Below are positions 9,756 through 63,674 of a stretch of DNA of 64,000 nt, piece after piece. This DNA comes from Scyliorhinus canicula (taxonomy: Eukaryota). A program made the translations under genes and the position numbers. Position 1 is the first letter of the stretch. Every line of letters starts with the position of its first letter. Where the stretch lies: the NCBI RefSeq assembly GCF_902713615.1, contig NC_052163.1:37272248-37336247 (forward strand), written 5' to 3'. The notes under the pieces are model-generated. The model saw nothing but the letters and a program-made list of their open reading frames with translations, ran no database searches and was not told the origin of the DNA.

Positions 9756-9790
9756 CACGAGCTTTCGGAGCACGGCTCCTTCTTCAGGTG
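9756..9790 (-). ncRNA. Minimal type I hammerhead ribozyme (mirror copy)
   Basis: Exact reverse complement of 11936-11970. Confidence 0.8.
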
Positions 9791-11790: not shown

Positions 11791-11935
11791 ACTGGCTTGG
11801 GACAATTCACACCTCTTTAACCTGGAGTTACCTCTCTCTCTGCATCTTTGATGATTTGATTGCCTGCAGGTGCTCGCATTCCGGGGCATCTCTGACTGTG
11901 TCTATATAAACATTTCTGGAACAAGCCTTTCCATT

Positions 11936-11970
11936 CACCTGAAGAAGGAGCCGTGCTCCGAAAGCTCGTG
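11936..11970 (+). ncRNA. Minimal type I hammerhead ribozyme in the Penelope terminal repeat
   Basis: CAC-CUGAAGA-A-GGAGC(CGU)GCUCC-GAAA-GC-UC/GUG: stem I CAC/GUG, 5-bp stem II, palindromic AGCU in place of stem III; predicted cleavage after 11967. Confidence 0.8.
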
Positions 11971-31822: not shown

Positions 31823-32182
31823 GGGGCAGCAGGGTAGCATGGTGGTTAGCATAAATGCTTCACAGCTCCAGGGTCCCAGGTTCGATTCCCGGCTGGGTCA
31901 CTGTCTGTGTGGAGTCTGCACGTCCTCCCCCTGTGTGCGTGGGTTTCCTCCGGGTGCTCCGGTTTCCTCCCACAGTCCAAAGATGTGCGGGTTAGGTGGA
32001 TTGGCCATGCTAAATTGCCCGTAGTGTCCTAATAAAAAGTAAGGTTAAGGGGGGGGGTTGTTGGGTTACAGGTATAGGGTGGATACATGGGTTTGAGTAG
32101 GGTGATCATGGCTCGGCACAACATTGAGGGCCGAAGGGCCTGTTCTGTTCTGTGCTGTACTGTTCTATGTTCTATGTTCTAT
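31823..32182 (+). mobile_element. HE1-type SINE, full length
   Basis: Near-identical to 2280-2608. Confidence 0.92.
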
Positions 32183-40330: not shown

Positions 40331-40818
40331 TTTCAGCTGTTTAGTTGCTATTCTGTCCTCATTCAAAGTCCTTCTCCCTTGCGAGTACACTGTTTTTCAA
40401 ACTTGGACAATGGGTTTATAAAGCTTTATACTTATCAGGAACATCATCCGTTCTCGCAGAACTTTATGAAAGTTTTCAGCTCAAGTTATTGAGTGGACAA
40501 AGCTTTTTAACATTCTGTATTCCAAGGTTAATTCTAAAGATCACTTAACTCAGCACCGAGCAAGGATACCAATGAATTAACCCACTAATCCAGATGGGAA
40601 ACCCAATATTTGGCACACACAATGCGTGATTTCTGTCTGTAATTGTTCTATCTGCACTACTGGTGCATGATTACAGACCTCAAGCCCAACAGAAGTTTTC
40701 TCAGACATTTCTCAGAACTTAAGCGCAAGGAGTTGATATTTAGTTGTTTCTTTTTGGTTTTCTGACTGGTGTATGAAAAATTGTATTGCTACTTATTCAT
40801 TCTTTGCTCTTTATTAAG

Positions 40819-41001
40819 AGATTTAGGGAAGGCTGCTTCAGTGCCTGTTGTATATGCAACCCCATATTATGCACTGGTGGTGAGAGGTCGCATTAGGAAG
40901 GGTGAGAGCGTATTTATCCATTCGGGGTCTGGTGATGTTGGGCAGGCTGCCATTTCCATTGCCCTCAGTTTGGGATGTTCTGTCTTTACTACTGTCGGAA
41001 G
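40819..41001 (+). pseudogene. FASN: Isolated fatty acid synthase exon (enoyl-reductase NADPH-binding segment)
   Basis: [56 protein letters not shown] matches vertebrate FASN ER as remembered; bounded by AG (40817-18) and GT (41002-03); no neighbouring FASN exons recognised. Confidence 0.85.
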
Positions 41002-41160
41002 GTAAAATGGGATTTTATTTGGTTATAAAATGGTTTGATGATGAGGAAATATTTTTCTTCCAAAATATACTTTCTTCATAAAACTTGTAAAGGTACAATA
41101 CAAAAAGTCTCAACTTAAAGTGCAGTAAAATTCAACCCAGCCAGGGTCCCAGGTTCGATT

Positions 41161-42392: not shown

Positions 42393-42880
42393 GGGCAGAA
42401 TTCTCCGCACCCGCGCGGCTTCGGGAAGGCCATCGTGAACTCAGCCGAGTTTCACGACGGCCTTGGAGCCTGCTCCTTGCACCCTATTCACTCCCCCCCC
42501 CCCACCCCCAGGGGGCTAGGAGCGGTGCACCGTAAATCTCGGCCGCCGGGCCTTGACACTTGCGGCAAGGCGGCGCGCCGAGAATGACGCGACGGCGGCG
42601 CCTAAGTGACGTCAGCCGCGCATGCGCAGGTCGGCCGGCTCCAACCCGCGCATGCGTGGCTGACGTCATGATGGCTTCCGGCTCCAACCCGCGCATGCGA
42701 CGTGGTGGCTTGATCTTGCGGGGCGGCGGAGGGGAAAGAGTGCGTCTCTTGGAGACGCCGGCCCGACGATCAACGACGACGAGCACGGCCGTGGTGCTCA
42801 CTCCCCTCTCCACCTCCCACAAGCCACAAACAAAACTTTGGCACCATGTTCACGACGGCAGTGACCATGTGTGGGTGCAC
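42393..42880 (+). mobile_element. Harbinger-type non-autonomous element, left part only
   Basis: Terminus GGGCAGAATTCTCCG; internal similarity to 51030-51741. Confidence 0.7.
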
Positions 42881-45800: not shown

Positions 45801-46498
45801 GACCCTTCTAAGAGGCGATGGCAAATGTAGTCAGACCCTATGCCCATAACGAACGTGTCTCTCATCAGCAGGTTCAAATATTTCGTAGCTGAAATGCCCC
45901 CCCCCCGCGCAGAAATCGTCCACAGACTCAGCGGGAAGTTGGCGCCACGTGGATAGGAGCTACCTGGCGTAGATGTTGTTGGTCCGCTGAGAGTAATTTT
46001 CCTTCAGTTGAGCCATGGCTTCTGAGTAGGTCGGCGCAGCCTGGACGAGTGGAAAAACGTTGGAGCTCAGCCGCGTGTACAGAATCTGGAGCTTCTGGGC
46101 TTCTGGGATTGGGTCAGGCGCAGACCCGATGTATGCTTCAAAACAGGCTAGCCAATGTTCAAAATCTTTTTTGCCGTTGTCTGTTTGAGGATGCAGCTGC
46201 AGGCGATCCGGCTTTGATGTGGAGGTCCATCTCTGAAAAATCTCTGTGTAATAAATTGATGCACTATCAATTACGAGAAGATGAGAGTAGAATGTAATCG
46301 AGGCTTTATTACACTGAGATGTGTGGCCTCCTACAGCAGCTGACAAAATGGCTGCTGTACGGGGAGCACGCATATTTATACTCCGCCTACGGGCGGAGCC
46401 AGCAGGCAGGGATCTGCCCCCATACCTGTAGTACAGGGGCCTTACCGTAAAACCCATATATATATATACGGCATAATACATCAGTGGTGACTACCACA
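42880..46498 (-). mobile_element. Gypsy LTR retrotransposon (5' LTR, gag, PR, RT, RH, IN), frameshifted, 3' LTR missing
   Basis: gag FEHWLACFEAYI..., RT SPWRAQVVVVK...VVDYSQTIN, IN LCHPGV...CVEC, VDFKG...VVDEYSRFPFA, NPRGNGQVERENG. Confidence 0.9.
46257..46498 (-). repeat. 5' LTR (242 bp) with TATA box and AATAAA
   Basis: TGTGGTAG...GTGCATCA; TATAAATA at ~46376-46383; gag ATG at 46230. Confidence 0.85.
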
Positions 46499-46499
46499 A

Positions 46500-49400
46500 C
46501 GAGGCTGGAAATGACGGCGGGATGCCTCGCTAATGAGATTTTAAATTATTATAGTGTTTTGAGATATCCTGAAGAGATGAAAAGTGTTCCACAAATGCAA
46601 AGGCGGCTTGAGTTTAAGAGCCGCGGGGTTATGCTGCAACTGAGCATGACCCTGGTGAGACCATGGGCGAAATTCTCCGCGGACCGACGTGACGCCCATT
46701 TCCGGCGGGAAAAAGCGGTGTGCATGACTCCGGCGTCCGGGCCTTCTTTTAAGCCGGTAATCTCCGTTCCCGGAAGGGCCAGCAGCGGACTGACGCGATA
46801 GGCGTCAGTTTCTCCAGCTGCGGAAGTGGCCAGTCCCGGCGTTTGTGTGGTGGGGAGAGAGAGCGACCCGGCATTGGGGGGGGGGGGGGGGGAAGGGGGG
46901 GGGGGAGTGGGGGGGGGGGGGAGAAGAGCGACCCGGCATTGGGGGGGGGGAGAAGAGCGACCCGGCATTTGGGGGGGGGGGGGGAGAAGAGCGACCCGGC
47001 ATTGGGGGGGGGGGGAGGGGAGAAGAGCAACCTGGCATTGGGGGGGGGGGGAGAGAAGAGCGACCCGGCATCGGGGGGGGGGGGGGTTGCGGCATCGGGG
47101 GGGGGTTGGGGGCAGCGGCGTGCAGAGAGGGGGGGCGACGGATGCCCGGGGCCAACGCACCGTCGCCCCCCCTCTGTACGCCGCTACCCCCTACCCCAAC
47201 CACCCCCCCCTCACCACCCTACCTCCCTCCAATGCCCCTACCCCCCTCCCCACCACCCCTACCCCCCTCCAATGCCGCCCCCCCATCTCTCGCAACGCCG
47301 CACCCCCCCCCCCTCAACGCCGGGTCCCCCCCCCCTCAACGCCGGTACCCACACCCCGTCCCCCTCCCTCTGAAGGCCGGTACCCACACCCCCCCTCCCT
47401 CTGAAGGCCGGTACCCACCCCCCCTCCTTCCTCCTCCCACCTTCCTTCCTCCTCCCCCCCTTCCTTCCTCATTAGCGGGGGGGGGGGGTGCGGCGTTAGT
47501 GGGGGGTGGGTGGGGGGTGGGTGGGTGCGGCGTTGGAGGGGGGTAGGGGTGGTGAGGGTGGGGTGGTTGGGGTAGGGGGCAGCGGCGTGCAGAGAGGGGG
47601 GGCGACGGATGCCCGGGGCCAATGCACCGTCGTCCCCCCTCTGCACGCCACTGCCCCTACCCCAACCCCCCCCTCACCACCCCTACCCCCTTCACCACCC
47701 CTACCCCCCTCCAACGCCGCACCCCCCCACCCCCCATGAACGCCGCACCCCCCCCTCCCACTAACGGAGGAAGGAAGGGGGGGAGGAGGAAGGAAGGGGG
47801 GACGAGGAAGGAGGGTGGGGAGGAAGGAAGGGGGGGAGGAGGAGAGAGGGGGTGTGTGTGGGTACCGGCGTTGAGGGGGGGGGGACCCGGCGATGAGGGT
47901 GGGGGGGTTGCGGCATTGCGAGAGATGGGGGGGCGGCGTTGGAGGGGGGATGGGGGTGCGGCGTTGGAGGGGGGATGGGGGGGCGGCGTTGGAGGGGGGA
48001 TGGTGGGGCGGCGTTGGAGGGGGGATGGGGGGGCGGCGTTGGAGGGGGGTAGGGGTGGTGGGGAGGGGGTAGGGGTGGTGGGGAGGGGGGTAGGGGTGGT
48101 GGGGAGGGGGGTAGGGATGGTGGGGAGGGGGGTAGGGGCGTTGGAGGGAGGTAGGGGTGGTGAGGGGGGGTGGTTGGGGTAGGGGGCAGCAGCGCACAGA
48201 GGGGGGGGCGACGGTGCGTTGGCCCCGGGCATCCGTCGCCCCCCCTCTCTGCACGCCGCTGCCCCCAAACCCCCCCCCGATGCCGCAAACCACCCCCCCA
48301 TGCCGCAAACCCCCCCCATGCCGCAAACCCCCCCCATGCCGCAACCCACCCCCCCCATGCCGCAACCCACCCCCCCCCCATCCATCCCCCCCCAATCTAC
48401 CAGCACGAAAGTAATTGATTGATCTCTCTCTCTTAACAAACACCTCCCCCCCCAATCTACCGGCACTCGAGGTAAGTGATTGATCTCTCTATTCCCAACA
48501 CCCCCAACCCACTACCCCCCCCCACCCTACCCCATCCCCCCTACCTCCCCACCCCTCTCTCCCCCTACCTCCTCCCCATTCCCTATCCCCCCACCGCCCC
48601 CCACCGCTCCCCACCGCGCTCCAATGCCTCCAATGCCTCCTCTACCGTGCCCCCCACCGCTCCCCACCGCGCTCCAATGCCTCCAATGCCTCCTCTACCG
48701 TGCCCCCCACCGCTCCCCACCGCCCCCCACCGCTCCCCACCGCTCCCCACCGCGCTCCAATGCTTCCAATGCCTCCTCTACCGCGCCCCCCACCGCCCCC
48801 CCACCGCTTCCCCCACCGCGCTCCAATGCCTCCTCCACCGCTCCCCCCACCGCGCTCCAATGCCGCTACCCACCCCACGCGCATTCGCCCCCCATCACTG
48901 AACGGCGTCAACCATCTTCAATGGTTGACGCCGTTTTAAAGCAACTTTGATTTTCACCGACGTGACCCGTGGCCACGTCGGCGGGACTTCGGCCCATCCG
49001 GGCCGGAGATTTGTGGACAGTAAAAAAAAAATGAAATCCCGCCGGCGCCAGCTGTTTTCAGAGGCTGCCGGCGGGATTTGCACAACGCTGGTTTTTGGCC
49101 GGTGGGAGATTTAAAAACCCTGCGGGAGCGGGAATAACGCCGCTGCCGGCCGATTCTCCGATCCTGCGTGGGGTCGGAGAATCCCACCCCATATTTGGAG
49201 TATTGTGTGCAGTTCTGGTCACCTCACTATAGGAAGGATGTGGAAGCATTGGAAAGGGTGCAAAGGAGATTTACCAGGATGCTGCCTGGTTTGGAGGATA
49301 GGTCTTCTGAGGAAAGGTTGAGGGAGCTTGGGCTTTTCTCTTTGGAGCGGAGAGGCAATTTAATAGAGGTTTATAAGATGATGATGAGGGATAGATAGAG

Positions 49401-49733
49401 TTGACATTCAGAGACTATTTCCTCGGGTGGGTGTAGCTGTTACAAAGGGGCATAACTATAAGGTTCAGGGTGGTAGATGTAGGAGGGATGTCCGAGGTAG
49501 GTTCTTTACTCAGAGAGTGGTTAGGGTGTGGAATGTGACTGTGTGGAATGGACTGCCTGCTGTGATAGTGGAGTTGGACACTTCGGGAACTTTCAAGCGG
49601 TCATTGGATAGGCACATGGAGCACACCAGAATGACAGGGAGTTGGATAGCTTGATCTTGGTTTCGGACAAGGCTCGGCACAACATCGAGTTCTGAAGGGC
49701 CTGTTCTGTGCTGTACTGTTCTATGTTCTATGT
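46500..49733 (+). mobile_element. CR1/HER1-type LINE 3' fragment split by a Harbinger element
   Basis: LVRP|YLEYCVQFWSPHYRKDVEALERVQRRFTRMLPGLE rejoins across 46665-49189; tail GAAGGGCCTGTTCTGTGCTGTACTGTTCTATG is shared with the HE1-type SINEs. Confidence 0.88.
46665..49189. mobile_element. PIF/Harbinger-type non-autonomous element filled with G/C-rich repeats
   Basis: Imperfect TIRs GGGCGAAATTCTCCG / GGGTGGGATTCTCCG; 3-bp TSD CAT (46662-46664, 49190-49192). Confidence 0.85.
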
Positions 49734-49889
49734 AAAGTCATTACTTGTTCTCTCAACATGACCCTCATTATAATTTATTGTTTGCCTATCTCACATGTCA
49801 AACTTGTGGATGTGAGAATTAATTGGAATTGATTGCCAATTAAAGGCAACCAATATTCTACCAGGGAGAATATCAGAGAAAGAATACTG

Positions 49890-50380
49890 TTACCCACCTT
49901 TAACGTTCAGTGTGATGATTTTACTGACATGACTAGACACTATTTCCCCAGTATATTTATAAGTCCATTGATCTGCCAGACATGTTTTCTGGATCAACAG
50001 TGATACATCTTGTGAATCTGAATGAAGTAATTTAATTTGATTTTGAGGTTCTTCATCACCAGCTTTGAAGCTAAACAAGGATGTTACCTTTTCATTGTTT
50101 CCCACTTTACTGAGTTCAATGAAATCAAATGTTCTCACTTTTGTTGAATTGATTGAGCAGGGTAGTTTAGTGTCTTCATTCAATATTCCTGTCACTGAAA
50201 TCTCACAATCTAATGTCACAAAGCCTGAAAATCAAGAATTTCCATTAGCTCACATTACCTCAGTTATAATCGGTGTTCAATGGGCTAGAAATTGAGTAGC
50301 ACTCAGTACTTACTTTGTGCAAAGGATGCACTTCTGTCCAAGATAACATAAAGGAAAATTGTTATACTGTGCAAACCCAT
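49890..50380 (-). CDS. B7-like Ig gene 2: signal-peptide exon (CDS 50380-50314) and V-like exon (50224-49898); read-through GG-stop gives 133 aa
   Basis: MGLHSITIFLYVILDRSASFAQ|SFVTLDCEISVTGILNEDTKLPC...DVSLLIQKTCLADQWTYKY...ITLNVK; phase-1 GT/AG junctions identical in layout to gene 1; no stops. Confidence 0.8.
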
Positions 50381-50400
50381 TCCTGGAATTTCAGGTTACC

Positions 50401-50914
50401 TGAAGTGTTCCAGTCGGGGAACACTTCAGCAGTCAAGGGCATTCAGCCTCTGATCTCCGGGTAAGCGTTCTCCAAGGCGGTCTTCAGGACACACAACAAC
50501 GTAGAATTGCCGAGCAAAAACTTATAGCTAAGTTCCGCACGCATGAGTGCGGCCTCAACCAGGATCTTGGATTCATGTCGCATTACATCCACCCCCCACC
50601 ATCTGGCCTGGACTTGTAAAATCCTACCAACTGTCCTGGCTTGAGACAATTCACACCTCTTTAACCTGTGATCATCCCTCTCCCTGGATCTGTAATGATT
50701 TGATTACCTGCTAATGCTCACATTCCAAGCATTGTCCAGCATCTCTGACTTTGTCTATATAAATGTTTCGGGAACATATCTCTTCATTCACCTGAGGAAG
50801 GAGCTGCGCTCCGAAAGCTAGTGTTTGAAACAAACCTGTTGGACTTTAACCTGGTGTTGTAAGACTTCTTACTGTGTTCACCCCAGGCATCTCCACATCA
50901 TGGCTAATTTGAAG
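50401..50914 (+). mobile_element. 5'-truncated Penelope copy (GIY-YIG end plus terminal repeat)
   Basis: Colinear with 11565-12019; flanked by TGAAG (50401-50405, 50910-50914). Confidence 0.9.
50789..50823 (+). ncRNA. Minimal type I hammerhead ribozyme, third copy
   Basis: CAC-CUGAGGA-A-GGAGC(UGC)GCUCC-GAAA-GC-UA/GUG; differences from 11936 fall only at N7, the loop II and H17. Confidence 0.75.
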
Positions 50915-51029
50915 ACAAAGACAAAATTAATTAAAAACACAGGGCTGAATTTTTCAACAGAAGATCTGTTGCTGGATCTGAAAACTGCAGACAAACATGC
51001 TCCGGTGGGCAATGGCACCCAGGCATGGC

Positions 51030-51741
51030 AGGCGCGATTCTCCCAAAGGGAGACAGAGTGCCGACGCCGGAGTGAAACCCGCTCCTCGCCCCCTATTCTC
51101 TCCCCCCCCCCCCCCCCCCCACCCCCGGGGGGCTAGGAGCTGCGGTGCGTGAATCTTGGCCGCCAGGCCTTGACGCTTGCGTCAAAGCGGCGCGCCAAGA
51201 ATGACGCGGCCGGCAGCGCCTAAGTGACGTCAGCCATGCATGCGCAGGTTGGCTGGCTCCAACCCGCACATGTGTGGTTGCCATCTTCCCCTCCGCTGCC
51301 CCGCGAGACGTGGCGGCTTGATCTTGTGGGGTGGCGGAGGGGAAAGAGTGCTTCTCTTAGAGACGCCGGCCCGATGATCGGTGGGCACCGATCGCGGGCC
51401 AGTCACCTCACGAGCACGCCCGTGGTGCTCGATCCTCTCTCCGCCCCCCACAGCCCCCACACTTACCTGTCGTGCGATGTTCACACCGGGAGCGACCAGG
51501 TGTAGTTGCCGTCGGCATGAAATGATCGGGGTCGTCAGGCCGCTCGGCCCATCCAGGCCAGAGAATCGGCAGTCGCGGGAAAAACGGCGAGCGGCGATTC
51601 TCCGAGCGGCGTGTCGCAAAACGCGATACGCCATTTTGGGGGGGGTGGAAGAATCGTGGGTGGTGCCAGGGCGGTGTGATGTGATTCACCTGGCCCTCCC
51701 GCGATTCTCCCACCCGGCGTGGGGAGCAGAGAATCGCGCCC
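51030..51741. mobile_element. Harbinger-type MITE
   Basis: TIRs AGGCGCGATTCTC / GAGAATCGCGCCC; 3-bp TSD GGC. Confidence 0.85.
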
Positions 51742-52359
51742 GGCATTTTTGCTGGAGCTGTCCAATTAACAACATTTGAGGACAATGGCCTGCCCCTTGC
51801 GCCCTCCATCCCCCAGAGCGAACTAGAGGGCTGGCAACTCAGGGGGAGGGGGCGGAGAGGGGGATCATCCTAGCAGCCACTTTGGATGTGTGGGTGGCCA
51901 TTACCCACAAGTAGCCTTTCCATAGGCAATGGAGTTCCCTTCAATCTCCCCACAGACTCTCCACAGGAACAGGCTCGTACACAAAATTAGATGGGCAATT
52001 TAACAAAATAAATTTGTACAGCAATGTGTCTAATTGGATTACCCTACACATCGCTGGCATGATTTTGGGTACACTGTTGGCAATGTGCTCTGCTGGCATG
52101 AAGATGTTGGACCATTGCCAGTTCTCCTGCTGCCTCCCTACTAAAGCCCTTAGTAATCTAAATCAAACCAGATTCACTTTGGCACCTGAGGTAGGTTTAA
52201 TCAGGAATGTTAAGGCACTGTGTACGGTTAGAGTACTCAAATACACATCAGATATATTTGCATTGCCAAGAATGTTTGCTTTACACAAGCGTGAACAAAA
52301 CAATTTATTAAGTTTCTTAAAGTCAGACTATACCTTTGCTTTACAAGTGGAAACAAAAC

Positions 52360-52709
52360 GAGCAGCACGGTAGCATGGTGGTTAGCATAAATGCATCACA
52401 GCTCCAGGGTCCCAGGTTCGATTCCCGGCTGGGTCACTGTCTGTGCGGAGTCTGCACGTCCTCCCCGTGTGTGCGTGGGTTTCCTCCGGGTGCTCCGGTT
52501 TCCTCCCACAGTCCAAAGATGTGCAGGTTAGGTGGATTGGCCATGCTAAATTGCCCGTAGTGTCCTAAAAAAGTAAGGTTAAGGGGGGAGGGGGGGTTGT
52601 TGGGTTACGGGTATAGGGTGGATACGTGGGTTTGAGTGGGGTGATCATGGCTCGGCACAACATCGAGGGCCGAAGGGCCTGTTCTGTGCTGTACTGTTCT
52701 ATGTTCTAT
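52360..52709 (+). mobile_element. HE1-type SINE, full length
   Basis: Near-identical to 2280 and 31823. Confidence 0.92.
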
Positions 52710-53002
52710 TAGAGCCACACCAGTCCCACACAGAACAAGGGGGTGGGGGGGTGAGCTAGCGTTGAGAACAAACAGTGAACAAAGGTTTAGTTCACCTGCA
52801 ACATCCTCGTATCGTTTCACATTTGAAATGAACACAAGAACTGCTCCTCCTGCTCGCTTTTCTTCCTTGGGTGTAAACTTTCTCTTTCGATAGAATTGGT
52901 CATCAGCGGTCGAGTTGACTCAGAACGAGATTCAAACGAAAATAAAAAATCCAGAAAAAATGTGAGTGTCGAGCCCTCAGCAAACTTTCCCCACCAGCAC
53001 TG

Positions 53003-53848
53003 ATAATATGCAAGATGTAATGGACAGGAAATAATAGACAAGAAATAATATGCAGGATGAAAAATACAGTGAAAAATAAGCAGGAAATAATAGACAGAAA
53101 GTAATAGACAGGAAATAATGAACAGGATGTAATGGACAGCAAATAATAAGCAGGATGTAATGGACAGGAAATAATAGCCAGGATGTAATGGACAGGAAAT
53201 AATAGACAGGATGTAATATACAGGAAATAATAAGCAGGAAATAATAGGCATGATGTAATAGACAGGAAATTATAGGCGGAATGCAATAGACAGGAAATAA
53301 TAGACAGGATGTAATCGACAGGAAGTATTGACAGGAAATAATAGACAGGAAGTAATCAACTGGAAATAATAGACAGGTTGTATTAGACAGGAAATAATAG
53401 ACAGGTTGTATTAAACAGGAATATTAGACAGGAAGTAATCAACAGGAAATAATAGACAGGAAGTATTAGACAGGAAATAATAGACAGGAAGTATTAGACA
53501 GGAAGTAATCGACAGGAAATATTAAACAGAAAATCATAGGCAGGTTGTAATAGACAGAAAGTAATGAACAGGAAATAATAGACAGGATGTAACAGACAGG
53601 AAATAATAGACTGTAAATAATAGACAGGAAATAATAGACAGGCTGTAATAGGCACAATGTAATAGACAGGAAATAGTAAGCCGAAAGTTAGACAGGAAGT
53701 AATGGACATTAAATAATAGACAAGATGTAATAGACAGGAAAAATAGACAGGAAATAATAGGCAGGATGTAATAGACAGGAAATAATAGGCAGGAAGTAAT
53801 AGCCAGGATGTAATAGACAGGAAATAATAGACAGGATGTAATAGACAA
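53003..53848. repeat. 14-bp minisatellite, about 60 units (GACAGGAAATAATA / GACAGGATGTAATA / GACAGGAAGTATTA)
   Basis: Directly visible tandem periodicity. Confidence 0.95.
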
Positions 53849-54779
53849 GCTAGCAGCAAGAATTGGGATTGGGTGAAGAACAACGCGCAATGGAAAAATC
53901 ACAATTTACACCTCTCCCGACACCATTCTCCAGTCCCCGGCTGATGGCATGAGCGAAGTTCACGCCCCGTGCCGGCAGGCCTTGCTAATCCGCTATTTTC
54001 CTGGATTTAAATCTCTTTACCGGGTTCCGAAACTCTATTGGGCTCCCTAGTGGGTGGAGGCAATCTGGTCGCTCAGCCCTGCAATCGCCCTCAGAGTTAT
54101 GGGTAGATCAAAGTAAATTTACATTAAAACCAAAATTGGGCCCAGCCTCTTCCATGATTTAAGGAGAACTTTGGGGGCGATTCTCTGATATTGAGGCCAA
54201 GTGTTCGCGCCGTCGTGAACGCTGTTGCATTTCACGACGGCGCGAACAGGGCCCAGGTACGACCTATTTGGGGGACCAGCACGGCATTGGAGCGGTTCAC
54301 ACCGCTCCAGCCTCCTTATGCGGCGCCAAATGGGGGCCGCGCCAACTGGCGCATGCGCAGTTGGGCCAGCTCAATCCTGTGCATGCGCAGTTGGGCCGCA
54401 CCATCCTGCGCCCTTTAAATTATATCAGACAATCTGTAATTTAGGAAAATTCTTTGTGATAATCTAGGCTTGATACTTTTACACAGCATTTGCTGTAAGG
54501 AGACAAATAAAATTATTGAATTATACAGAATTTTAGCAAATGAACAAGCAGATGAAACAAGAATACTATTTGTTAAACTTTACAATGGGGACATTTTTTG
54601 TACATAACCAATTCATACAAAACAATGAAAAGGTGAAAAACCATTCATTTAAAAAAATATATATTTACATGTCGTTCACAGCAAAATATGAATCACAGCA
54701 CCTCAGTCAAATCAGATTTTACAATAAATTAATTGCTTGATTGACTTAAATTAAATCGTACTAATTGTTTCTTGATTTT

Positions 54780-55370
54780 TATTTACAGGATGCAGGCTTC
54801 ATTAGTTAGGCCTGCATTTATTGTCCATCCCTTATTGCCCTGGAGAAGGTGGTGATGAGCTGCCTTCTTGAACCACTGCAGTCCCTATGGTGTTAGTACA
54901 CCCACAGTCTATTAGGGAGGGAGTTCCAGGAGTTTGACTCAATGACGGTGAAGGAATGGTGATATGTTTCCAAGTCAGCAGAGTGAGTAACTTGGGGGGG
55001 TGGACATCCAGTTGGTGGTGTTCCCTGCTATCTGCTGGCCTTGTCCTTCTCGATGGTGATGATTGTAGCCTTGGAAGGTGCTGTCTCATGAGCCTCGGTG
55101 AGTCCCTGAAGTGCATCTTGTAGATGCTGTGCGCTGCTGCCACTGTTCAACAGTGGTGGATGGAGCGAATGTTTGCAGAAGGAGTGCCAGTCAAGTGGCC
55201 ATTTTTTTCTTGGATGTTAGTGGGCTTCTTGAATGTCATTGCAGCTGCATTCAGGAGTCAGGTGATAAGTCACCCACCATAGTATTCCTAACTTTTGAAC
55301 TGTTTGTGCAGCCACAGTATTTATATGGCTAACCAGTCCAGTTTCCGATCAATGGTAACCCCCAGGGTAT
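54780..55370 (-). mobile_element. LINE relic, same family as 5930-6890
   Basis: Reverse complement of the CTCACCACCACCTTCTCCAGGGCAATAAGGGATGG-type tail plus RT end. Confidence 0.8.
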
Positions 55371-55796
55371 TTGTCATTGACTATTGATATAAAACAAAGT
55401 AGTAAAGCAAAGCGTTGGACAGTAAAATAGTTAACATGAGAACGATTTACAGTAATTGATGTGCAAATGTAATTATCGATTTGCACAATTTTGCTAATAA
55501 AGGATATCCTTTATCAATTTCAGTTTCCCAAAGTAGTTGCCTGCAACCATAATTCCTCTTTACCAGAATGAAGAATACAGTCCAGCACAAAAATCCTTAC
55601 AAAATATTGAGGGATCGCCAACCATGTCCACGCACTGAGTAAATTAAAGAAAATATATTTATCTAAACAAGCACCAGGTATCTGTTGGCCTTGTCCTTCC
55701 AGAAGGAAGTTTTGGAAGGTGTTGTTTTTTAAAGTATGACTGGACCAACGATTTTCTTCTCCTTCGACAGAGCACAGTGATGTCGCAAAATGAAAC

Positions 55797-55802
55797 TTTT
55801 AT
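55797..55802 (-). terminator. Candidate poly(A) signal of B7-like gene 1
   Basis: AATAAA on the minus strand about 420 nt after the stop at 56223. Confidence 0.4.
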
Positions 55803-56222
55803 TAACCTCGCTGTAAAAATAGGAATACTTCTTGATAGACAGCTGCCAGGATTGAAGGGTTTACTCTGCAGTTTCTGTTTAGGAACCCAGTGTTTTACCA
55901 ATGTTGTTCATGGACAAGTAATATGCGAGATTGTTTCTTTGGGGAGAAAATTAATAGTGAAGAGATCAGCATGCTGCCATACATATTATCCTAGGGAGGA
56001 ACTGCATGAAGAATATGTCATTTCCAGGTTCTCATTGAATAGGGATGTGGCAGTGCTTGAAATGCTCTGTGTGGTTTCAATCCACTTTCCATTATTCACA
56101 TGGTACAAAAGGACCTGAATAACTGTTCATATGAAGTATCATATGTTCCTCAAACTGTCCATGACATTGACGTCAATGCATTCTTCACGTCAGAAATAAG
56201 AATGATTCAATTGCAATTGCTA

Positions 56223-56363
56223 TTAAGCTTCAGCCCTCCGGTCACTGGACAACTGTTAAAAGACAAAAAAATTATTTTCAGAAACTGTGACACATGGCTT
56301 TCAAACAATCTCTAATGTTTGAAATCGCACCTACCATTGGGGTTTCAGATGGTTCTCTAACTT
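56223..56363 (-). CDS. Gene 1 cytoplasmic exons (29 nt and 30 nt, 82-bp intron)
   Basis: Strong polypyrimidine acceptors and GTAGGT donor; EVREPSETPM|LSSDRRAEA*. Confidence 0.7.
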
Positions 56364-59300
56364 CTGAAATTAAAAAAAACAACAAATTAATTATTTTTGT
56401 CACACAATATTTGATCTGAATTAACATGCCCAACTGTGAAATATGCAGTCTGTTATTTATTTTAGTTCCATTGGGCAAATCAAATTAGTCACAATACTGT
56501 AGAAGAGGAATTCTTGGAGTGATGGTTTTCTGGATCAATATGCTGAAGAACCAACTAGAGAACAGGCCATCCGAGACTGGGTATTGTGGAATGAAAAAGG
56601 AATAATTGGTAATCTAGTTGTGCGAGACACCTTGGGGATGAGTGCCCACAATATGATAGAATTTTGCATCAATATGGAGAGTGATGTAGTTGATTCTGAG
56701 AGTAGAGTCCTGAATTTAAATAAAGGAAACTACGATGATATGAGGCGTGATTTGGTCATGATAGATTGGGAAACATTACTGAAAGGGATGATAGTGAATA
56801 TGCAAAGGCAAACATATAAGAATTGCATGGGTGTACCACAACAATTGCAAATGTAAAATGGGAAGGGTGGTCAAATCATGGCTTACAAGGGAAATTAGAA
56901 ATCATATTAGATCCAAGGACGAGACATACAAATTGGCCAAGAAAAACAATAGATCAGAGGAATGGGAGCAGATTAGAATTCAGCAAAGGAGGACCGAGGG
57001 ATTGATTAAGAAGAAGAAAATAGAGTATGAGAGTAAGCTTGTGGGGAACATAAAATCTGACTGTAACTTTTCTATTGGTGTGTGCAGAGAAAAAGATTGG
57101 TCAAGACAAATGTAGGTCCCTTAGTTGGGAACAAGGGACTTATAATGGCGAAGAATGAAATGGTTGACCAACTTAATACATACTTTGGTTCTGTCTTCAC
57201 AAAGGAGGACGCAAAAAAACAGAAATGTTGGGTAACACAGGGTTTATTGAGAGGGAAGAACTAAATGAGATCAGTATTAGTAGGGAAATTGTATTGGCAA
57301 TATTAACTGGATTGAAGTCCAGGTGGCCTGATAATGTACCTCCCAGAATACTTAAGGAAGTGGCATGAGATATAATGGATGCATTGGTCATCATCGTCCA
57401 AGATTTTATAGACTCTAATAGTTCCTACAAATTGGAGTATAGCTAATGGAACCGCACCATTTAAAAAGGGAGGTAGAGCGAAAATAGAGAATTCTTGACC
57501 AGCAAGCCTGACGTCTGTAGTGGGGAAAATTCTAGAATCCATTATCAAAGATATTATAGTAGAGCATTTGGAAAATAGTGGCAGGATTGGACAAACATGA
57601 ATTCATGAAAGAGAAATCATGCTTGAAAACATCCACTGGAATTCTTTGAGGATGTTACTAGTAGAGTTGATGGGGGAGTCAGTGGATGTGGCTTACTTGC
57701 ACTTTCTGAAGGCTTTCGACAAAGTCCCGCAAAAGAGATTAGCTTGTAAATTAAAGCGTATGGGATTAGGGGTAGTGTATTGAGATGGATAGAAAACTGG
57801 TTGGCAGAAAGGAAACAAATGTAGGAATAAATGTGTATTTTTCCAAGTGGTACTGCAGAGATCAGTGCTGGAACCCCAGCTACTAAAAATGTATATTTAT
57901 GATTTAGATGAGGGAACTAAATGTAACATCTCCACTTTTGCAGATGCCCCCAAGTTGTGTGAGAGGGAGAGCTGTGAGGATGATGCAGAGATCCTTCAGT
58001 GTAATTTGGACAAGATGAGTGAGTAGCCAAATGAATGGCAGATGCAATACAGTGTGTATAAATAAGAGGCTATGCACTTTTGGAGCAAAAACGGGAAGGC
58101 GGATTATTATCTGTAATGCTATAAATTAGGTTAGGGTAATGTGCAACGAGACATGGGTGTCCTCATCCACCAGTTTTTGAAGGTAAGCATGCAGATGCAG
58201 CAGACGATAAAGAAGCAAATGGTATACTGGCCTTAATATAAACAGGATTCGAGTGTTATAATAATAATAATATTTATTGTCACAAGTAGGCTTACATTAA
58301 CACTGCAATGAAGTTACTGTGAAAAGCCCCTCGTCGCCACATTCCGGTACCTGTTCGGGTACACAGAGGGAGAATTCAGAATGTCCAATTCATCGAGGAG
58401 CAGGGATGTCTTGCTGCAAATATACAGGCATTGGCGAGACCATACTTGGAATACTGTATGCAGTTTTGGTCTCCTTATCTGAGGTAGGATATTCTTGCTG
58501 TCGAGGGAGTTTAGAGAAAGTTTACCAGATTGATCCCTGGGACGGCGGGACTGTGTATAAGGAGAGATTGAGTTGGTTAGGATTGTATTCGCTGGAGTTC
58601 AGAAGAATGAGGGTCTTTCTCATAGAAACCTATAAAATTCTAACAGGATTAGACAGGATAGATGCAAGAAGGATGTTCCCGATGGTGGGGGTGTCAAGAG
58701 CCAGGATTCGCAGTCTGAGCAAATGGGGTTGACGATTTAGGACTGATATGAGAAGACATTTCTTCACCTAGAGAGTGGTCAGCCTGTGGAATTCGCTGCC
58801 ACAGAAAATAGTTGAGGCCAAAAAAATTGTATGTTTAGGGGAAGGCCCAACAACACCTTCCCATGGCTACTCAGAATAAGAAACAGATACCAGCTTTTCC
58901 AGTGGCACACATGACCAGAGAGTGATTTTAAAAAGTTATGTTTCTTTCATTTACTCCCCGTTTTCCTTTCCCTATACCGACATCATAACTGGGAAACACC
59001 AGATGATTTAATCCCAAATCTTTCCCAATGCTGCTTGAATCATATGCCCCAATCGAAGGTGCCCCAAAGCAGTTCAGCGTGGCTCACCTGGGCTTTTCCC
59101 CTATCTCCTTGTGGGAGTACAGGAGGGGTGGAAACCGGGTTTGTATTTGTGTATTACCTAACCCCTCTTCACCCAATTATATCTCATGATTGCAACTAAT
59201 TAGGCAACATTCATAGCTTTAGACATTCCTTGTCTATTGAGCAAACAAATTCACAAACATTTCCTTCATCGGTAAGGAAAGGGTATTTGATTAACAATGG

Positions 59301-62300
59301 TTCAGCCAAACGATTATGCAAGCCAGACAATTCTGGCAAGCGAATTAGAATGCCAAACGGAATTTCAAACTGTTAGGACATTGGAGGTTCTGGAACTTTT
59401 TGATTAAGCTTTGGAACTTATGATAGTTAGCATATGGTAAGGCTAAACTGTATCGCTTAACAGATTATGGGTATATTCAAGATAAAAGTGTAAGATTAAA
59501 TTGTGTACTGATCAAAAGTTTTAAAAAGGGAAAATGAAGCATTTCCACAACCATCATACCGGAATGCCTTGTCCTCATAAATTCCAAAACCACCAAGATT
59601 GCTATTACAAGTAAACCTCCTGGAAGAATCACAGAGGTAGCTATCAGAATCTTTTTCTTCTTTTCCTCTTCTGCTAGCTTTTCAATATTAGATGCATCAC
59701 TCAAGACTGAAACAAAAAATGTGGGGAGAAATTATTTTATTCATGATTAATTTCAGCATCAACCATGATATACATAACAATGTCACTTATTCCTATCCTC
59801 TGGCACTATATTAATTAGCCACAGCAAAATTGACATTCGAACAACATTGTGAGGAAAAGGACTGCAATAGTTTAACAAGGAATTCCCCATGAGCATTTCA
59901 GCCTAAATGGTCATGGATATTAAATGCAGCCTTGCAATAATGTCCACATCTTCAGAATAAATGATATTAATAAAGTTGCCTTTCTTCCAACAGCAATGTG
60001 TTAAAATCACTTGCAGAATGAATGCTATGAACTTACTTGAAAAGTTTTGCCACAGTTTGTATTCAATTTCCTCCACATTCCGCACAGCGCAAGAATAATT
60101 GCCTTTGGAAACATTTACTCCTTCGATCTGAAGTGTACTGGTAATATTGAACAGACCCTGTGGGGTTTTTACACTACTAGTATTAGCACTAGATGTCAGG
60201 TTGCTTGTTCCATTGATGAACCAGTGAATCTGAGCCAGCGGATATCCAATTGTATTACAAATGAGGATTTCTGTTCTCACTGGTGTGGTTATTGGGATTC
60301 CAGTCACACTTGATAAATGGTGTGGAGCTAAAAAGAATAATTGTATTATTATTATTGTAATGAAAAAGAGCTGTAGAGTAACAGGGGTGCAGTTTTTGCA
60401 CTTCACGCCACACCAATAAAAAACACCAGTATTTATGACAATAAATACAGATTATGTATTTAGGATATCCCAGATTAGGAGTACGAGAGAGGAAAATATT
60501 TATTGGTACCAATCTGTGATTTTGCCTTGGACCAGAATTTTACGCTCTTTCTGGCAGAGACGGGGTTACATAGAACAGTACAGCACAGAACAGGCCCTTC
60601 GGCCCTCGATGTTGTGCCGAGCAATGATCACCCTACTCAAACCCACGTATCCACCCTATACCCGTAACCCAACAACCCCCCCCCCCCCCTCTTAACCTTA
60701 TTTTTAGGACACTACGGGCAATTTAACATGGCCAATCCACCTAACTCGCACATCTTTGGACTGTGGGAGGAAACCGGAGCACCCGGAAGAAACCCACGCA
60801 CACACGGGGAGGACGTGCAGACTCCACACAGACAGTGACCCAGCCGGGAATCGAACCTGGGACCCTGGAGCTGTGAAGCATTTATGCTAACCACCATGCT
60901 ACCGTGGTTCCCTCCAGGTTTCCTCCCACCGTAACTTTGCAGTGATTTTATACTGGGGCAGGCAAGGCTGGCGACAGGAAGACCACCGTTGCTCCAATTA
61001 AGGCCCTTAAGTGGCCACTTAAAGATGGTTTCCCACCTGGCCTCAATCTTTTGGTAGGTGGGCAGATGGTAGCTCAAGGGGAGGGCTCCTGGAAATGAAT
61101 AGAGTTAGATCTAGCGTGAGAAGGTTTGGGGGGAGGGGTGGGGGGCAGAGCACAGGGGTACCCTTCCCCACTGAAGCCCCTGAGGCCTTTCCTAACCTGC
61201 CCATCTGAGCCCCTCACTGCAGCACTGTTCCTGGAGAGACTGCAGGGCCGGCAGCTCCCCAGGATGGAGAGTGCAGAACAGAAGACCCACCTTATGCCAA
61301 TCAATGCAAAATGGTAATAGACCTGTAATAGCAGGGATGTGTTCCCTGACTACCAAATAATTCAGGCCTTGAGTTCTGAGTACTTCTATTTCAAATGTGT
61401 GCATGTTTTTCTGGAGTATATAAGTGTCCTCCACAAATCTTCTGTTTTGTTTACAATGTTGGTTTTGCTTATTTAGTGGCAACAGCAGGAAGGAAAAGTA
61501 AAACTGTAAACCCTAGACTGCCATAATTTAACAGTTACAGCCTAATATTCAAGTTAACTTATGCATATAAAATGATTTGACAATATTAAAAATGGAGAAT
61601 GAGAAATGTATTTATTAGATTGTAATGCACAAAGTAAAAGTCATTCAAATATTGAATAGTTTCTTTAAATGGCAGCATTACAAAAGTATGCTTTGGTATG
61701 GAGGTTATCACTGGTTTATATTGCTGCAGATTGAAAATTAGTTTGAATCGGTGGGAACTATTACTCCTTTGGAATGAAAATGCTCATTGTGTGTATGATA
61801 GCATCATCTTGCCTGGCATGAAACCATCACCATACTGCTGGCCGAGGCGGCTTCCGCAAGGGCTGGGAGAACTGGTAGGGAGTGACCAGGGGGATACTGT
61901 CTGGCAGGTTGGGTCCGCGCGCGACCGGCACCATGTTGTGCGGCACGACCCCTGCAGGTTGTTGCCATGCGCACGCGCGGCCGCGGACCAGCAATTCTCT
62001 GGCCATTTATCTTGTTCCCGCCTAGAGGTTTACGTGGCTCAGCTGCTGGCCTCTCATCAATCGGAGGATCGCTGCTGGGGCGGCACCGATTTTGTTTGAC
62101 GCAAAACGTCACGGATCCTCCAGACGTAGATCCCGAATCGAATCCAGCCCGTTGTCTTTGAGAGGAAACATTCAACTGTAACTCCCAGGTATCTGCTCAC
62201 ACAGATAGAAAAGGCACTATTCAAAGGTGAGCAATGTATTCTCCAGCTATCCTGTTATTTAGCCAACACCACCAAAAACAGAGGAAATTATCATTCATTC

Positions 62301-63052
62301 CGTTAATTGATGTTTGTGGAATCTCTCCCGTTCAAGTTGATTGTTGAGCTCGATTCCATAGCAATAGATACTGCAACTCAGAACAATCGCTGTCTGCCAC
62401 ATACTTCAGGTGGTTCTGAGGATCTAAGTATCACTATTTCTTTCCTCTCTAACGTGTCTCCCGTTTTAATCTGTTGTCAGTCACACATATCAAGCTTTTT
62501 AAGAATAATAACAGAAATTGGAATTTGTTACTAATTCGCAGCAACCAATATTTTACCAGGAAGAACACCAGGGAAATAAATGTTATCCACCTTTAACCTT
62601 CAGTGTGATGGTTTGAATTCTGTGACCCGAAGTTGTTTCCACGTCGTACTGGTATGTTCCACCATCTGACAATTGTGTTTTCTGGATTATCAGTGAGATA
62701 TCCAGTGAATTTGGGTGAAGTAATTTAATTCGACCTTGAGCTCCTCTGAAATGTGTGCTGCCGTTCAAGATTGTACTTCCATTTTTAGATATACGCAGTT
62801 CCATCAAGTGAAGTGTGTTGATTTTGCATGGCAGTTCTGTGTCTCTATCAAATAGTCCTGTCACTGAATGGCTGCAATTTAAAGTTAGGAACTCTGAAAA
62901 ACAAACATATTCATTTCCTCCCATTATTGCCTCAGTGACAATCGCTGTTAAATCAACCACATATTCAGAAATACTTGGTACTTACGTGTTGCCAGGTATG
63001 TGCGTGTGGATAGGATGACACAAAGGAAAGTCACTGTGTGATAGAAACCCAT
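56223..63052 (-). CDS. B7-family-like type I membrane Ig protein (SP-V-C-TM-short tail), 288 aa, six coding exons: 63052-62986, 62893-62591, 60327-60037, 59706-59560, 56363-56335, 56252-56223
   Basis: All junctions are GT/AG with phases 1,1,1,1,0 and the 867-nt frame is open. The C domain LIC..IGYP.A.I.W...ANTS..T..GLFNITSTL...YSCAV.N is CD80/PD-L1-like. There are 10 N-glycosylation sequons and one TM segment. The two tail exons are the least certain part. Confidence 0.85.
56480..58830 (+). mobile_element. Degenerate CR1 LINE in gene 1 intron (antisense to the gene)
   Basis: AIRDWVLWNE, KSWLTREIR, LDRIDARRMFP; a SINE tail is inserted at ~58258-58390. Confidence 0.85.
59560..59706 (-). CDS. 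Gene 1 stalk and transmembrane exon
   Basis: 147 nt, phase 1-1; ILIATSVILPGGLLVIAILVVL. Confidence 0.88.
60037..60327 (-). CDS. Gene 1 IgC exon
   Basis: 291 nt, phase 1-1; canonical C...W...YSC. Confidence 0.92.
60569..60912 (-). mobile_element. HE1-type SINE in the V-C intron of gene 1
   Basis: Reverse complement of the 52360 copy. Confidence 0.9.
62591..62893 (-). CDS. Gene 1 V-like exon
   Basis: 303 nt, phase 1-1; LPC...DISLIIQKTQLSDGGTYQY. Confidence 0.9.
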
Positions 63053-63674
63053 CCCTGAAGGTAGTTCACCTGGGAAAATACAGAACCATTAAGTCTCAGG
63101 AATCTAATGAAACCTGCTGTTTTCACTATCTTAGGCATCACGTTAGCTTTTGTTTTAGGAAACTCGAAGAGCAAGGTAGAGCCGCATTAATAATTCCATT
63201 AAGGCACATTTGCATTACTAAAAAAAAAATGAATGCTCGTAATTATTTAATGTGCTTCAGGGGTAAAACAAAAACGAAACAATCAGTTTTTTAATGTTTT
63301 CCTACAGTTCCCACAGCCAGAACAGCAGAATCCACAAACTGATAACAGTTTACAAATGGACGGTGCAGCAATGTCCAATCTCGACAGGCTGTGTGGAATT
63401 TTGCATCAGCAACGGATTTTTGCCAAAATCAGTTCCCCGCAACGATTGACAGCTTTGCCGTGCAGTCGGACCGGGTACATTCCTCTATAACTGCTGTCCT
63501 ATCCTGGGATCTGGGTGGTCCGATTCTGGATGTTGGTCCGATCTCAGTGTTGTGATATCCCATCCGAATGGCTATCAATCGTTGAGCAAGTGCTGGCACA
63601 GCATTTCAAATGGGGGGGGGGGGGGGGGGGGGGCGTAAGTACCAAGTATTTCTGAATATGTGGTTGATTTAACA
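62946..63674. repeat. Perfect 41-bp inverted repeat (arms 62946-62986 and 63634-63674)
   Basis: TGTTAAATCAACCACATATTCAGAAATACTTGGTACTTACG versus CGTAAGTACCAAGTATTTCTGAATATGTGGTTGATTTAACA. Confidence 0.95.
62986..63069 (-). CDS. Gene 1 signal-peptide exon (ATG at 63052)
   Basis: TTTCCCAG acceptor, MGFYHTVTFLCVILSTRTYLAT, GTAAGT donor. Confidence 0.85.

What the first reader, a model, noticed from the sequence alone, without database searches (positions are those of the whole stretch)
49774..62591. Conserved GG-stop plus intronic poly(A) signal after the V exon in both paralogues: membrane ligand and secreted decoy pair
Seen: both V exons end AAA G|GT GGN TAA at non-consensus donors (GTGGAT, GTGGGT). 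A poly(A) hexamer lies about 120 nt downstream in each (ATTAAA 62465-62470; AATAAA 49774-49779), and the first ~130 nt of intron are clearly alignable although the V domains share only about 40% of residues. Read-through gives secreted V-only proteins (125-aa and 133-aa precursors). Established: secreted PD-L1 arises by intronic polyadenylation. Inference: gene 1 makes membrane and soluble forms, while gene 2, with no C/TM exon found, may be a dedicated soluble form.
Basis: partly seen in the sequence, partly recalled or inferred. Interest (0 to 1): 0.72.

Follow-up and report, generated by a model that had tools for sequence, protein, structure and literature searches.

The report
Catshark B7-like gene plus truncated copy
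Two neighbouring catshark immune-ligand-like genes do share a stop codon and a poly(A) hexamer just past their first Ig exon. That stretch evolves no more slowly than silent sites, the second "gene" is a two-exon remnant of a full-length paralogue, and nothing yet shows that secreted V-only proteins are made.

Summary
The sequence observation is correct. On the minus strand of this Scyliorhinus canicula window both V exons end AAA G|GT GGN TAA. Read-through gives 125-aa and 133-aa precursors. ATTAAA and AATAAA lie at +121 and +119 of the intron, and the intron start aligns between the copies.

The functional reading is not borne out.
- Gene 1 is the annotated V-C-TM protein LOC119953204. It belongs to an elasmobranch B7-like family and is not the published catshark PD-L1.
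- Gene 2 is not an old partner. It is a Scyliorhinus-lineage duplicate of a full-length "CD276 antigen" gene (P0039), reduced to a 671-bp leader+V island between transposon copies. It has no C/TM exon and no called gene, and no indexed run holds it. Two otherwise invariant glycines are replaced.
- In four shark genes with DNA available, the stop at codon 3 is present 4/4 and the hexamer 3/4. One skate gene has neither.
- The intron start (57-67% identity) diverges as fast as synonymous sites and faster than intron 1.
- Hexamers occur at 1.3 per kb, and both catshark sites lack U-rich and UGUA elements.

A gene 1 intronic-polyadenylation isoform therefore stays untested; I put it at about 20%.

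The parts
62986..63055 (-). Gene 1 (LOC119953204) leader exon. The ATG is at 63052 and an acceptor-like CCTTCAG lies just upstream.
   Evidence: Translation and tblastn with P0001. The acceptor was read from the sequence.
62591..62893 (-). Gene 1 V exon, phase 1 at both ends, V-set domain.
   Evidence: P0001 joins it to the C exon as KVK|APHH.
62583..62590 (-). Gene 1 donor GTGGAT followed by AA. Read-through codons are GGT GGA TAA, with TAA at 62585-62583.
62465..62470 (-). ATTAAA hexamer at +121 of gene 1 intron 2. The next 50 nt are T-poor (0.20 against a background of 0.30) and there is no upstream UGUA.
60037..60327 (-). Gene 1 IgC exon, with the B7-type GYP...W motif.
59560..59706 (-). 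Gene 1 stalk and transmembrane exon.
56226..56367 (-). Gene 1 two short cytoplasmic coding exons, about 56367-56326 and 56252-56226.
   Evidence: tblastn with P0001.
50314..50380 (-). Gene 2 leader exon, 91% identical to the S. torazame P0034 leader.
49898..50224 (-). Gene 2 V exon. The ORF is open, but it carries G111W (the DxGxY glycine) and G122S at positions invariant in 9 relatives.
49890..49897 (-). Gene 2 donor GTGGGT followed by AA. Read-through codons are GGT GGG TAA, with TAA at 49892-49890.
49774..49779 (-). AATAAA at +119 of the gene 2 intron. It aligns exactly with AATAAA of the Chiloscyllium punctatum P0035 gene (L001 12142-12147).
49668..49736 (.). Multi-copy repeat that ends gene 2's homology to its relatives at about +165 of the intron.
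   Evidence: Self-comparison of the window and blastn against L001.
50408..50901 (.). Transposon copy, 84-85% identical to 9668-10162 and 11564-12019, lying 28 nt upstream of the gene 2 ATG. It replaces the upstream region that gene 1 shares with Chiloscyllium.
42770..48900 (-). Retroelement (integrase core domain hit at 43395-43964) plus a G-rich/Pro-coding low-complexity tract. These fill the space where gene 2's C, TM and cytoplasmic exons should lie.

Best explanation
The window holds part of a tandem cluster of an elasmobranch B7-like family. Automatic pipelines name its members CD276-, PD-L1- or PD-L2-like.

Gene 1 is an intact V-C-TM-cytoplasmic gene, LOC119953204. Its V-exon donor is used for normal splicing to the C exon.

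Gene 2 is a relic. It is a Scyliorhinus-lineage duplicate of the full-length type-B gene, of which only the leader and V exons and 165 nt of intron survive between transposon copies. It is most likely a silent pseudogene whose frame is still open.

The G-G/R-stop and the hexamer about 120 nt into the intron were already in the ancestral shark gene. They persist because shark non-coding DNA diverges slowly. The stop's T is donor position +6, and the hexamer lies in sequence that drifts at the synonymous rate.

Shown here: gene structures, family placement, truncation, and the comparative rates. Inferred: that gene 2 is silent, and that the hexamers are little used.
For: Gene 1:
- It equals P0001, 288 aa, V-C-TM.
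- The best solved relatives are CD276 (E 2e-19), PD-L1 and PD-L2.

Gene 2:
- No C/TM exon anywhere in the window.
- No other called gene within 10 kb of gene 1.
- Flanked by repeat copies at 50408-50901 and 49668-49736.
- Groups 100/100 with full-length S. canicula P0039 and S. torazame P0034, and has the longest branch, 0.18 against 0.09 and 0.06.
- Unique G111W and G122S.
- The highest V-exon dN/dS values are in pairs that include it, 0.81-1.24.
- No listed run holds it, whereas 18 runs from 8 studies hold gene 1.

Motifs:
- Intron 2 +1..+165 is 57-67% identical among four shark genes, against 69-80% for intron 1 and dS 0.32-0.73 for the V exon.
- Introns 3 and 4 align for 260-520 nt at 70-76%.
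- About 10% of aligned non-coding 6-mers are perfectly conserved.
- The hexamer is absent from the Chiloscyllium type-B gene, and both motifs are absent from the skate gene.
- The PAS context is poor.
- No family protein shorter than 196 aa turned up in three protein searches.
Against: - The gene 2 frame is intact, and its V-exon indels against gene 1 are 15 and 9 nt, so in frame. If its whole branch were neutral I would roughly expect a stop or frameshift (my estimate, 5-25% chance of none).
- AATAAA sits at exactly the same aligned place in gene 2 and in Chiloscyllium P0035. Gene 1 lost it but has ATTAAA 4 nt further on, which looks like turnover under constraint.
- The stop is kept through a TAA/TGA difference in 4 of 4 shark genes.
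- Four runs of one study hold 73-75% of the 31-mers of 62300-63100. That is more than the 41% expected from spliced exons, and it equals the 75% expected if intron 1 is kept and RNA runs on to about 62445.
- Reads were never laid, so use of the sites is not excluded.
Confidence: 0.66

Rival explanations
1. Gene 1 has a composite terminal exon. When the weak GTGGAT donor is not spliced, cleavage after ATTAAA at 62465 yields an mRNA for a secreted 125-aa V-only precursor. This would be made beside the membrane form, as with IgM secretory/membrane switching or human CD274-L2A.
For: - In-frame stop two codons past the exon, with a hexamer at +121.
- The gene 1 donor has G-to-A at +5, whereas relatives have GTAGGT.
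- The motif pair recurs in 3 of 4 shark genes, with an apparent hexamer shift in gene 1.
- Run shares of 0.53-0.59 and 0.73-0.75 exceed the spliced expectation of 0.41.
- V-only and V-C soluble PD-L1 variants exist in humans (PMC6877088).
Against: - No sequence constraint above the synonymous rate.
- T-poor downstream region and no UGUA.
- Hexamers are at background density.
- The hexamer is lost in the Chiloscyllium type-B gene, and both motifs are absent in the skate gene.
- No annotated V-only product in about 15 elasmobranch species.
- The only annotated soluble-type isoform in the family skips the TM exon (P0059).
- Excess 31-mer share is equally explained by pre-mRNA.
Confidence: 0.2
2. 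Gene 2 is a living gene for a secreted single-V protein. Truncation left leader, V exon, immediate stop and AATAAA, so its default product would be a 133-aa soluble decoy for the receptor of the type-B ligand.
For: - Open frame with both splice signals of intron 1 intact.
- In-frame indels only.
- AATAAA at +119 is the first signal a transcript would meet.
- Its branch is only about twice that of its full-length relatives.
Against: - No run listed as holding it, although gene 1 is held by 18.
- No called gene there.
- The upstream region shared by gene 1 and Chiloscyllium is replaced by a transposon copy 28 nt before the ATG.
- Radical changes at two invariant glycines, one being the DxGxY glycine.
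- dN/dS about 0.8-1.2.
- The sister genes P0039 and P0034 are full length.
Confidence: 0.1
3. The alignable start of intron 2 is kept as a splicing control element for a suboptimal phase-1 donor. On this reading the stop and hexamer are passengers.
For: +1..+50 is 84% identical between gene 1 and gene 2, the best of all segments. Blocks such as TTGGTTGC and AATTCCA are shared by three or four genes.
Against: - Across four genes the region is no better kept than synonymous sites and worse than intron 1.
- The Chiloscyllium type-B gene has a gap of about 17 nt inside it.
- The 84% rests on 50 nt.
Confidence: 0.06

Closest known systems
Human CD274-L2A / secreted PD-L1 (intronic polyadenylation in intron 4; PMC6877088)
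   Same: A B7-family gene with a phase-1 Ig exon donor left unspliced, a short in-frame tail, then a stop and a poly(A) signal about 100 nt into the intron, removing the TM exon.
   Different: - In humans it follows the IgC exon, so V and C are both kept. Here it would follow the V exon.
- In humans the signal comes from a LINE-2 element and transcripts, protein and function were shown. Here nothing but the motifs is seen, and they show no extra conservation.
- These genes are not PD-L1.
IgM secretory/membrane composite exon (knowledge of the field, not tested here)
   Same: Competition between a suboptimal 5' splice site and a nearby downstream poly(A) site decides between secreted and membrane forms.
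   Different: The IgM secretory site has strong, regulated auxiliary elements and abundant transcripts. The catshark sites have a T-poor downstream region.
TM-exon skipping soluble isoforms of B7/CD28 proteins
   Same: Another way to get a soluble form from the same family. It is annotated within this family itself: Hemiscyllium ocellatum CD276 isoform X2 (P0059) lacks exactly the TM exon.
   Different: It uses ordinary splice sites and the normal 3' end, and keeps V and C.
CD276 (B7-H3), PD-L1 and PD-L2
   Same: V-C-TM layout and an IgC domain with GYP...W. These are the best solved matches: E 2e-19 for CD276 and about 1e-9 for PD-L1 and PD-L2.
   Different: - The V domain lacks the canonical Cys-Trp-Cys core, with Y-x-Y in place of Y-x-C.
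- The true catshark PD-L1 is another gene, XP_038660173.
- The neighbour in the window is a FASN exon, not the human CD274 or CD276 neighbourhood.
Truncated duplicate (unprocessed pseudogene) in a tandem immune-gene cluster
   Same: Gene 2 keeps its intron 1 and splice signals, lacks the 3' exons, is embedded in transposons, and shows faster and more radical protein change.
   Different: No stop or frameshift has yet hit the remaining 131 codons.

Membership tests
B7 family (IgV-IgC-TM ligands) | Signal peptide, V-set domain, C-type Ig domain, single TM, phase-1 exon per domain | tested here: met
   For gene 1: Pfam V-set 8.9e-7, and Ig_3/C2-set hits on the C exon. Exon phases were read from the sequence. 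PDB matches are CD276, PD-L1, PD-L2, BTN1A1 and CD80. Gene 2 has only the leader and V.
PD-L1 (CD274) orthologue | Identity with the lineage's PD-L1 gene, and a canonical V core (Cys...Trp...Cys) | tested here: not met
   The published catshark PD-L1 is XP_038660173, with a canonical ...VECRF...YWH...YRC... V domain (PMC12151841 supplement). P0001 and gene 2 have no such core.
CD276 (B7-H3) orthologue | Orthology by tree and synteny with vertebrate CD276 | tested here: inconclusive
   CD276 is the best PDB hit, but mainly over the C domain. The names are automatic. The one neighbouring gene identified in the window is FASN. No tree with tetrapod B7 genes was built.
Intronic-polyadenylation (composite terminal exon) isoform | In-frame stop soon after the unspliced donor | tested here: met
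   Stop at codon 3 in gene 1, gene 2 and both Chiloscyllium genes, and at codon 7 in the skate gene.
Intronic-polyadenylation (composite terminal exon) isoform | Poly(A) hexamer with auxiliary elements (downstream U/GU-rich, upstream UGUA) | tested here: not met
   The hexamers are present, but the downstream 50 nt have T 0.20 and 0.24 against a background of 0.30, and there is no UGUA within 60 nt upstream.
Intronic-polyadenylation (composite terminal exon) isoform | Transcripts that end at the site | not testable with these tools
Only coarse 31-mer shares are available.
Intronic-polyadenylation (composite terminal exon) isoform | Conservation of the exonised intron part above the neutral rate | tested here: not met
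   Identity 57-67% (JC distance about 0.43-0.63) against dS 0.32-0.73, and against intron 1 at 69-80%. The hexamer is lost in L003.
Pseudogene (gene 2) | Loss of essential exons | tested here: met
   No C, TM or cytoplasmic exon in the window, while the closest relatives P0039 and P0034 have them. Homology ends at repeats on both sides.
Pseudogene (gene 2) | Frame-disabling mutation in what remains | tested here: not met
   Leader and V translate without a stop, and the splice signals of intron 1 are intact.
Pseudogene (gene 2) | No expression | tested here: inconclusive
   No run was listed as holding 49700-50430, although 18 hold the gene 1 stretch. The raw-read runs were never laid.

The most novel reading that the evidence does not exclude
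Sharks keep, in an elasmobranch-only B7-like family, a composite terminal exon right after the V exon. This lets each gene release a bare receptor-binding V domain. The truncated gene 2 would then be a copy frozen in the secreted state, a natural single-domain decoy. The stop kept in 4 of 4 shark genes, and the AATAAA-to-ATTAAA shift in gene 1, would be the footprints of that selection.
Probability: 0.07. Interest if true: 0.6.

Novelty: new member of a known kind. Interest (0 to 1): 0.27.

Why it matters
If the sites were used, they would show that the membrane/soluble switch by intronic polyadenylation seen in human PD-L1 has an older or independent counterpart in cartilaginous fish. They would also point to a natural V-only checkpoint-ligand decoy.

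As it stands, the value is more modest.
- It documents an unannotated two-exon remnant in a tandem B7-like cluster.
- In sharks, alignable introns and shared motifs between old paralogues are the neutral expectation, not a sign of function.
- The automatic PD-L1, PD-L2 and CD276 names in this family should not be taken as orthology.

Tried and rejected
- Local sandbox scripts that read the whole window file did include them.
- The word-indexed homologue search with the V domain plus GG found nothing. This shows only that no 56-178-aa relative is indexed.
- The look-up of encoding contigs gave no DNA for S. canicula, S. torazame, Heterodontus, Mustelus or Hypanus because the files were too large. 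Two isoform look-ups were not on record. The closest orthologues therefore could not be compared at the DNA level.
- I first took S. torazame P0034 as the one-to-one orthologue of gene 2. I dropped this when full-length S. canicula P0039 appeared.
- I considered gene conversion between genes 1 and 2 to explain the shared GTGG..TAA. Pairwise identities give only a slight excess (0.67 against 0.57-0.63), so I left it open.
- I took the C. punctatum 161-aa V-set model P0058 as a possible V-only product. It is V spliced to the last exon across assembly gaps.
- A motif scan for further FASN exons found none. The scan was crude.
Full report
**What is there**

Both genes lie on the minus strand. The species is Scyliorhinus canicula. 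The C-exon search returns a 100% match to NCBI "uncharacterized protein LOC119953204" (P0001, 288 aa).

Gene 1 has these exons:
- a leader exon at 63052-62986;
- a V exon at 62893-62591;
- a C exon at 60327-60037;
- a stalk/TM exon at 59706-59560;
- two short cytoplasmic exons near 56367-56226.

Gene 2 has a leader exon at 50380-50314 and a V exon at 50224-49898. Both V exons hit Pfam V-set.

**The observation**

- The V exons end AAA G|GT GGA TAA and AAA G|GT GGG TAA.
- Read-through precursors are 125 and 133 aa.
- ATTAAA is at 62470-62465 (+121) and AATAAA at 49779-49774 (+119).
- The introns align at 84% over +1..+50 and 72% over +1..+130, and homology ends near +165.

One refinement concerns the hexamers. 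They are not the same aligned hexamer. Gene 1 reads AACAGA where gene 2 has AATAAA, and its ATTAAA begins 4 nt further on.

**Chance**

- Sense AATAAA/ATTAAA occurs 1.25-1.3 times per kb in this window.
- 21% of positions have one within 200 nt.
- Gene 1 has eight intronic ones.
- A stop by codon 3 after GGTR is seen at 4% of such sites.
- In a real phase-1 donor the T of that codon is consensus position +6. From established knowledge of 5' splice sites, the prior is therefore higher than 4%.
- The two copies inherited the arrangement, so it is a single event.

**Family**

- A full HMMER scan with the gene 1 V domain finds about a dozen 196-300-aa elasmobranch proteins. Pipelines name them PD-L1-like, PD-L2-like, CD276 or butyrophilin-like.
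- The best solved relatives of P0001 are CD276 (E 2e-19), PD-L1 and PD-L2 (about 1e-9).
- The published catshark PD-L1 is a different protein, XP_038660173, with a canonical V core (PMC12151841 supplement).
- These genes are therefore B7-like but not PD-L1.

**Gene 2 is a remnant, not a partner**

- A search with S. torazame P0034 found a full-length S. canicula gene on the same chromosome: P0039, "CD276 antigen", 297 aa, 86% identical.
- In a 23-protein tree, gene 2 forms a 100/100 group with P0039 and P0034. It has the longest branch, 0.18 against 0.09 and 0.06.
- Gene 1 belongs to a different clade, with Carcharodon P0003 and Cetorhinus P0050.
- tblastn with P0034, P0007, P0001 and P0003 finds no C, TM or cytoplasmic exon for gene 2 anywhere in the window.
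- Its homology to relatives is a 671-bp island. Upstream, a transposon copy occupies 50408-50901, 28 nt before the ATG. It replaces about 850 nt of upstream sequence that gene 1 shares with Chiloscyllium.
- Downstream, a multi-copy repeat begins at 49736.
- Further down lie a low-complexity tract and a retroelement with an integrase domain.
- No gene is called within 10 kb of gene 1.
- Gene 2 alone has G111W at the DxGxY glycine and G122S, at positions invariant in nine relatives.
- V-exon dN/dS is highest in pairs that include it, 0.81-1.24.
- No run is listed as holding 49700-50430, while 18 runs from 8 studies hold the gene 1 stretch.
- Against a dead gene: the frame is open, and its indels relative to gene 1 are 15 and 9 nt, so in frame.

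**Is the motif conserved beyond background?**

DNA could be fetched for three relatives.

| Gene | V-exon end and read-through | Hexamer in intron 2 |
|---|---|---|
| Chiloscyllium punctatum P0035 (L001) | G\|GT AGG TGA | AATAAA at +110, aligned exactly with gene 2's |
| C. punctatum type-B gene (L003) | G\|GT AGG TGA | AGCAAG at that place; no AATAAA/ATTAAA in the first 400 nt |
| Skate Rhinoraja longicauda P0018 (L002) | G\|GT AGG TCA, first stop at codon 7 | none in its 215-nt intron |

In sharks the stop is therefore present 4 of 4 and the hexamer 3 of 4. In the one skate gene neither is present.

The rates, however, show no constraint:
- Intron 2 +1..+165 is 57-67% identical among the four shark genes.
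- Intron 1 is 69-80% identical and the V exon 63-77%.
- V-exon synonymous distances are 0.32-0.73. That is the same range as the intron distance.
- Between gene 1 and L001, introns 3 and 4 align at 70-76% for 260 and 520 nt, and upstream DNA aligns for about 850 nt.
- About 10% of aligned non-coding 6-mers are perfectly kept. One shared AATAAA is therefore unremarkable.
- The ancestral donor was GTAGGT, a good site. Only gene 1 has the weakening +5 A.
- Both catshark hexamers are followed by T-poor sequence (0.20 and 0.24, against a background of 0.30) and have no UGUA upstream.

**Transcripts**

What remains is indirect.
- Most RNA-like runs hold 0.37-0.48 of the 31-mers of 62300-63100. That is close to the 0.41 expected from spliced exons.
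- Two runs hold 0.53-0.59, and four runs of one study hold 0.73-0.75.
- The expected share is 0.60 for read-through to about 62445, and 0.75 if intron 1 is also kept.
- This is compatible with read-through, but equally with pre-mRNA. It is a lead only.
- No family product shorter than 196 aa appears in any protein search.
- The only annotated soluble-type isoform skips the TM exon (Hemiscyllium P0059).

**Comparison with the known case**

Human CD274-L2A skips the exon-4 donor and ends at a LINE-2-borne signal about 100 nt into intron 4. It keeps both V and C, and it was shown at RNA, protein and functional level (PMC6877088).

The catshark layout resembles it in geometry only. It comes after the V exon, without auxiliary signals, without extra conservation, and without transcripts shown.

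**Verdict**

- The best explanation (0.66) is inherited, largely neutral sequence in an intact membrane B7-like gene and in a truncated, probably silent duplicate.
- A used intronic poly(A) site in gene 1 keeps about 0.2.
- A living V-only gene 2 keeps about 0.1.

Noticed in passing
window 40769-41005 (+): This ORF contains an exon of the fatty acid synthase enoyl-reductase domain (E 1.9e-24 to human FASN residues about 1674-1732). The B7-like cluster therefore abuts, or lies within, a FASN gene on the opposite strand. A crude motif scan found no further FASN exons to the right.
   Followed up: partly
window 42770-46481 (-): Retroelement remains with an integrase core domain hit (43395-43964) and gag/pol-like ORFs. 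They occupy the place where gene 2's 3' exons would be expected.
   Followed up: partly
window 46500-48900: About 2.4 kb of G-rich low-complexity repeat that reads as Pro/Gly-rich ORFs in all frames on both strands.
   Followed up: no
window 62893-62591 and 50224-49898; L001 11709-12032; L003 19177-19503: The V exons evolve about as fast as silent sites (dN/dS 0.55-1.24). True orthologues P0039 and P0034 are 79% identical in V but 91% in the rest. This points to diversifying or very relaxed evolution of the receptor-binding domain across the family.
   Followed up: partly
P0059 (Hemiscyllium ocellatum CD276 isoform X2), P0002 (Heterodontus, 230 aa), P0016 (Amblyraja, 196 aa): Annotated family isoforms lack exactly the TM exon (P0059), end after the C domain (P0002), or lack the C domain (P0016). 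Soluble or shortened forms of this family may therefore exist, but by routes other than a V-only read-through.
   Followed up: partly
L003 10001-27879; P0058, P0062: The C. punctatum v1 model P0058 (161 aa, V-set only) is an assembly artefact. V is spliced to the last exon across N gaps, and the C/TM part sits on a separate 2-kb contig as P0062.
   Followed up: yes
L002 14986-15758: In the skate Rhinoraja longicauda a second V-set gene (293-aa product) starts about 5 kb downstream of P0018. The tandem arrangement may therefore extend to skates.
   Followed up: no
window 52362-52500, 2283-2421, 31826-31964 and a copy inside gene 1 intron 2: A roughly 140-bp SINE-like element is present in several 95-98% identical copies.
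   Followed up: no
window 60037 / L001 13555: In Chiloscyllium the C-exon donor is also followed at once by a stop (A|GT TAG). In catshark gene 1 the frame stays open for 44 codons. Immediate stops after phase-1 Ig exon donors are thus not peculiar to the V exon.
   Followed up: partly
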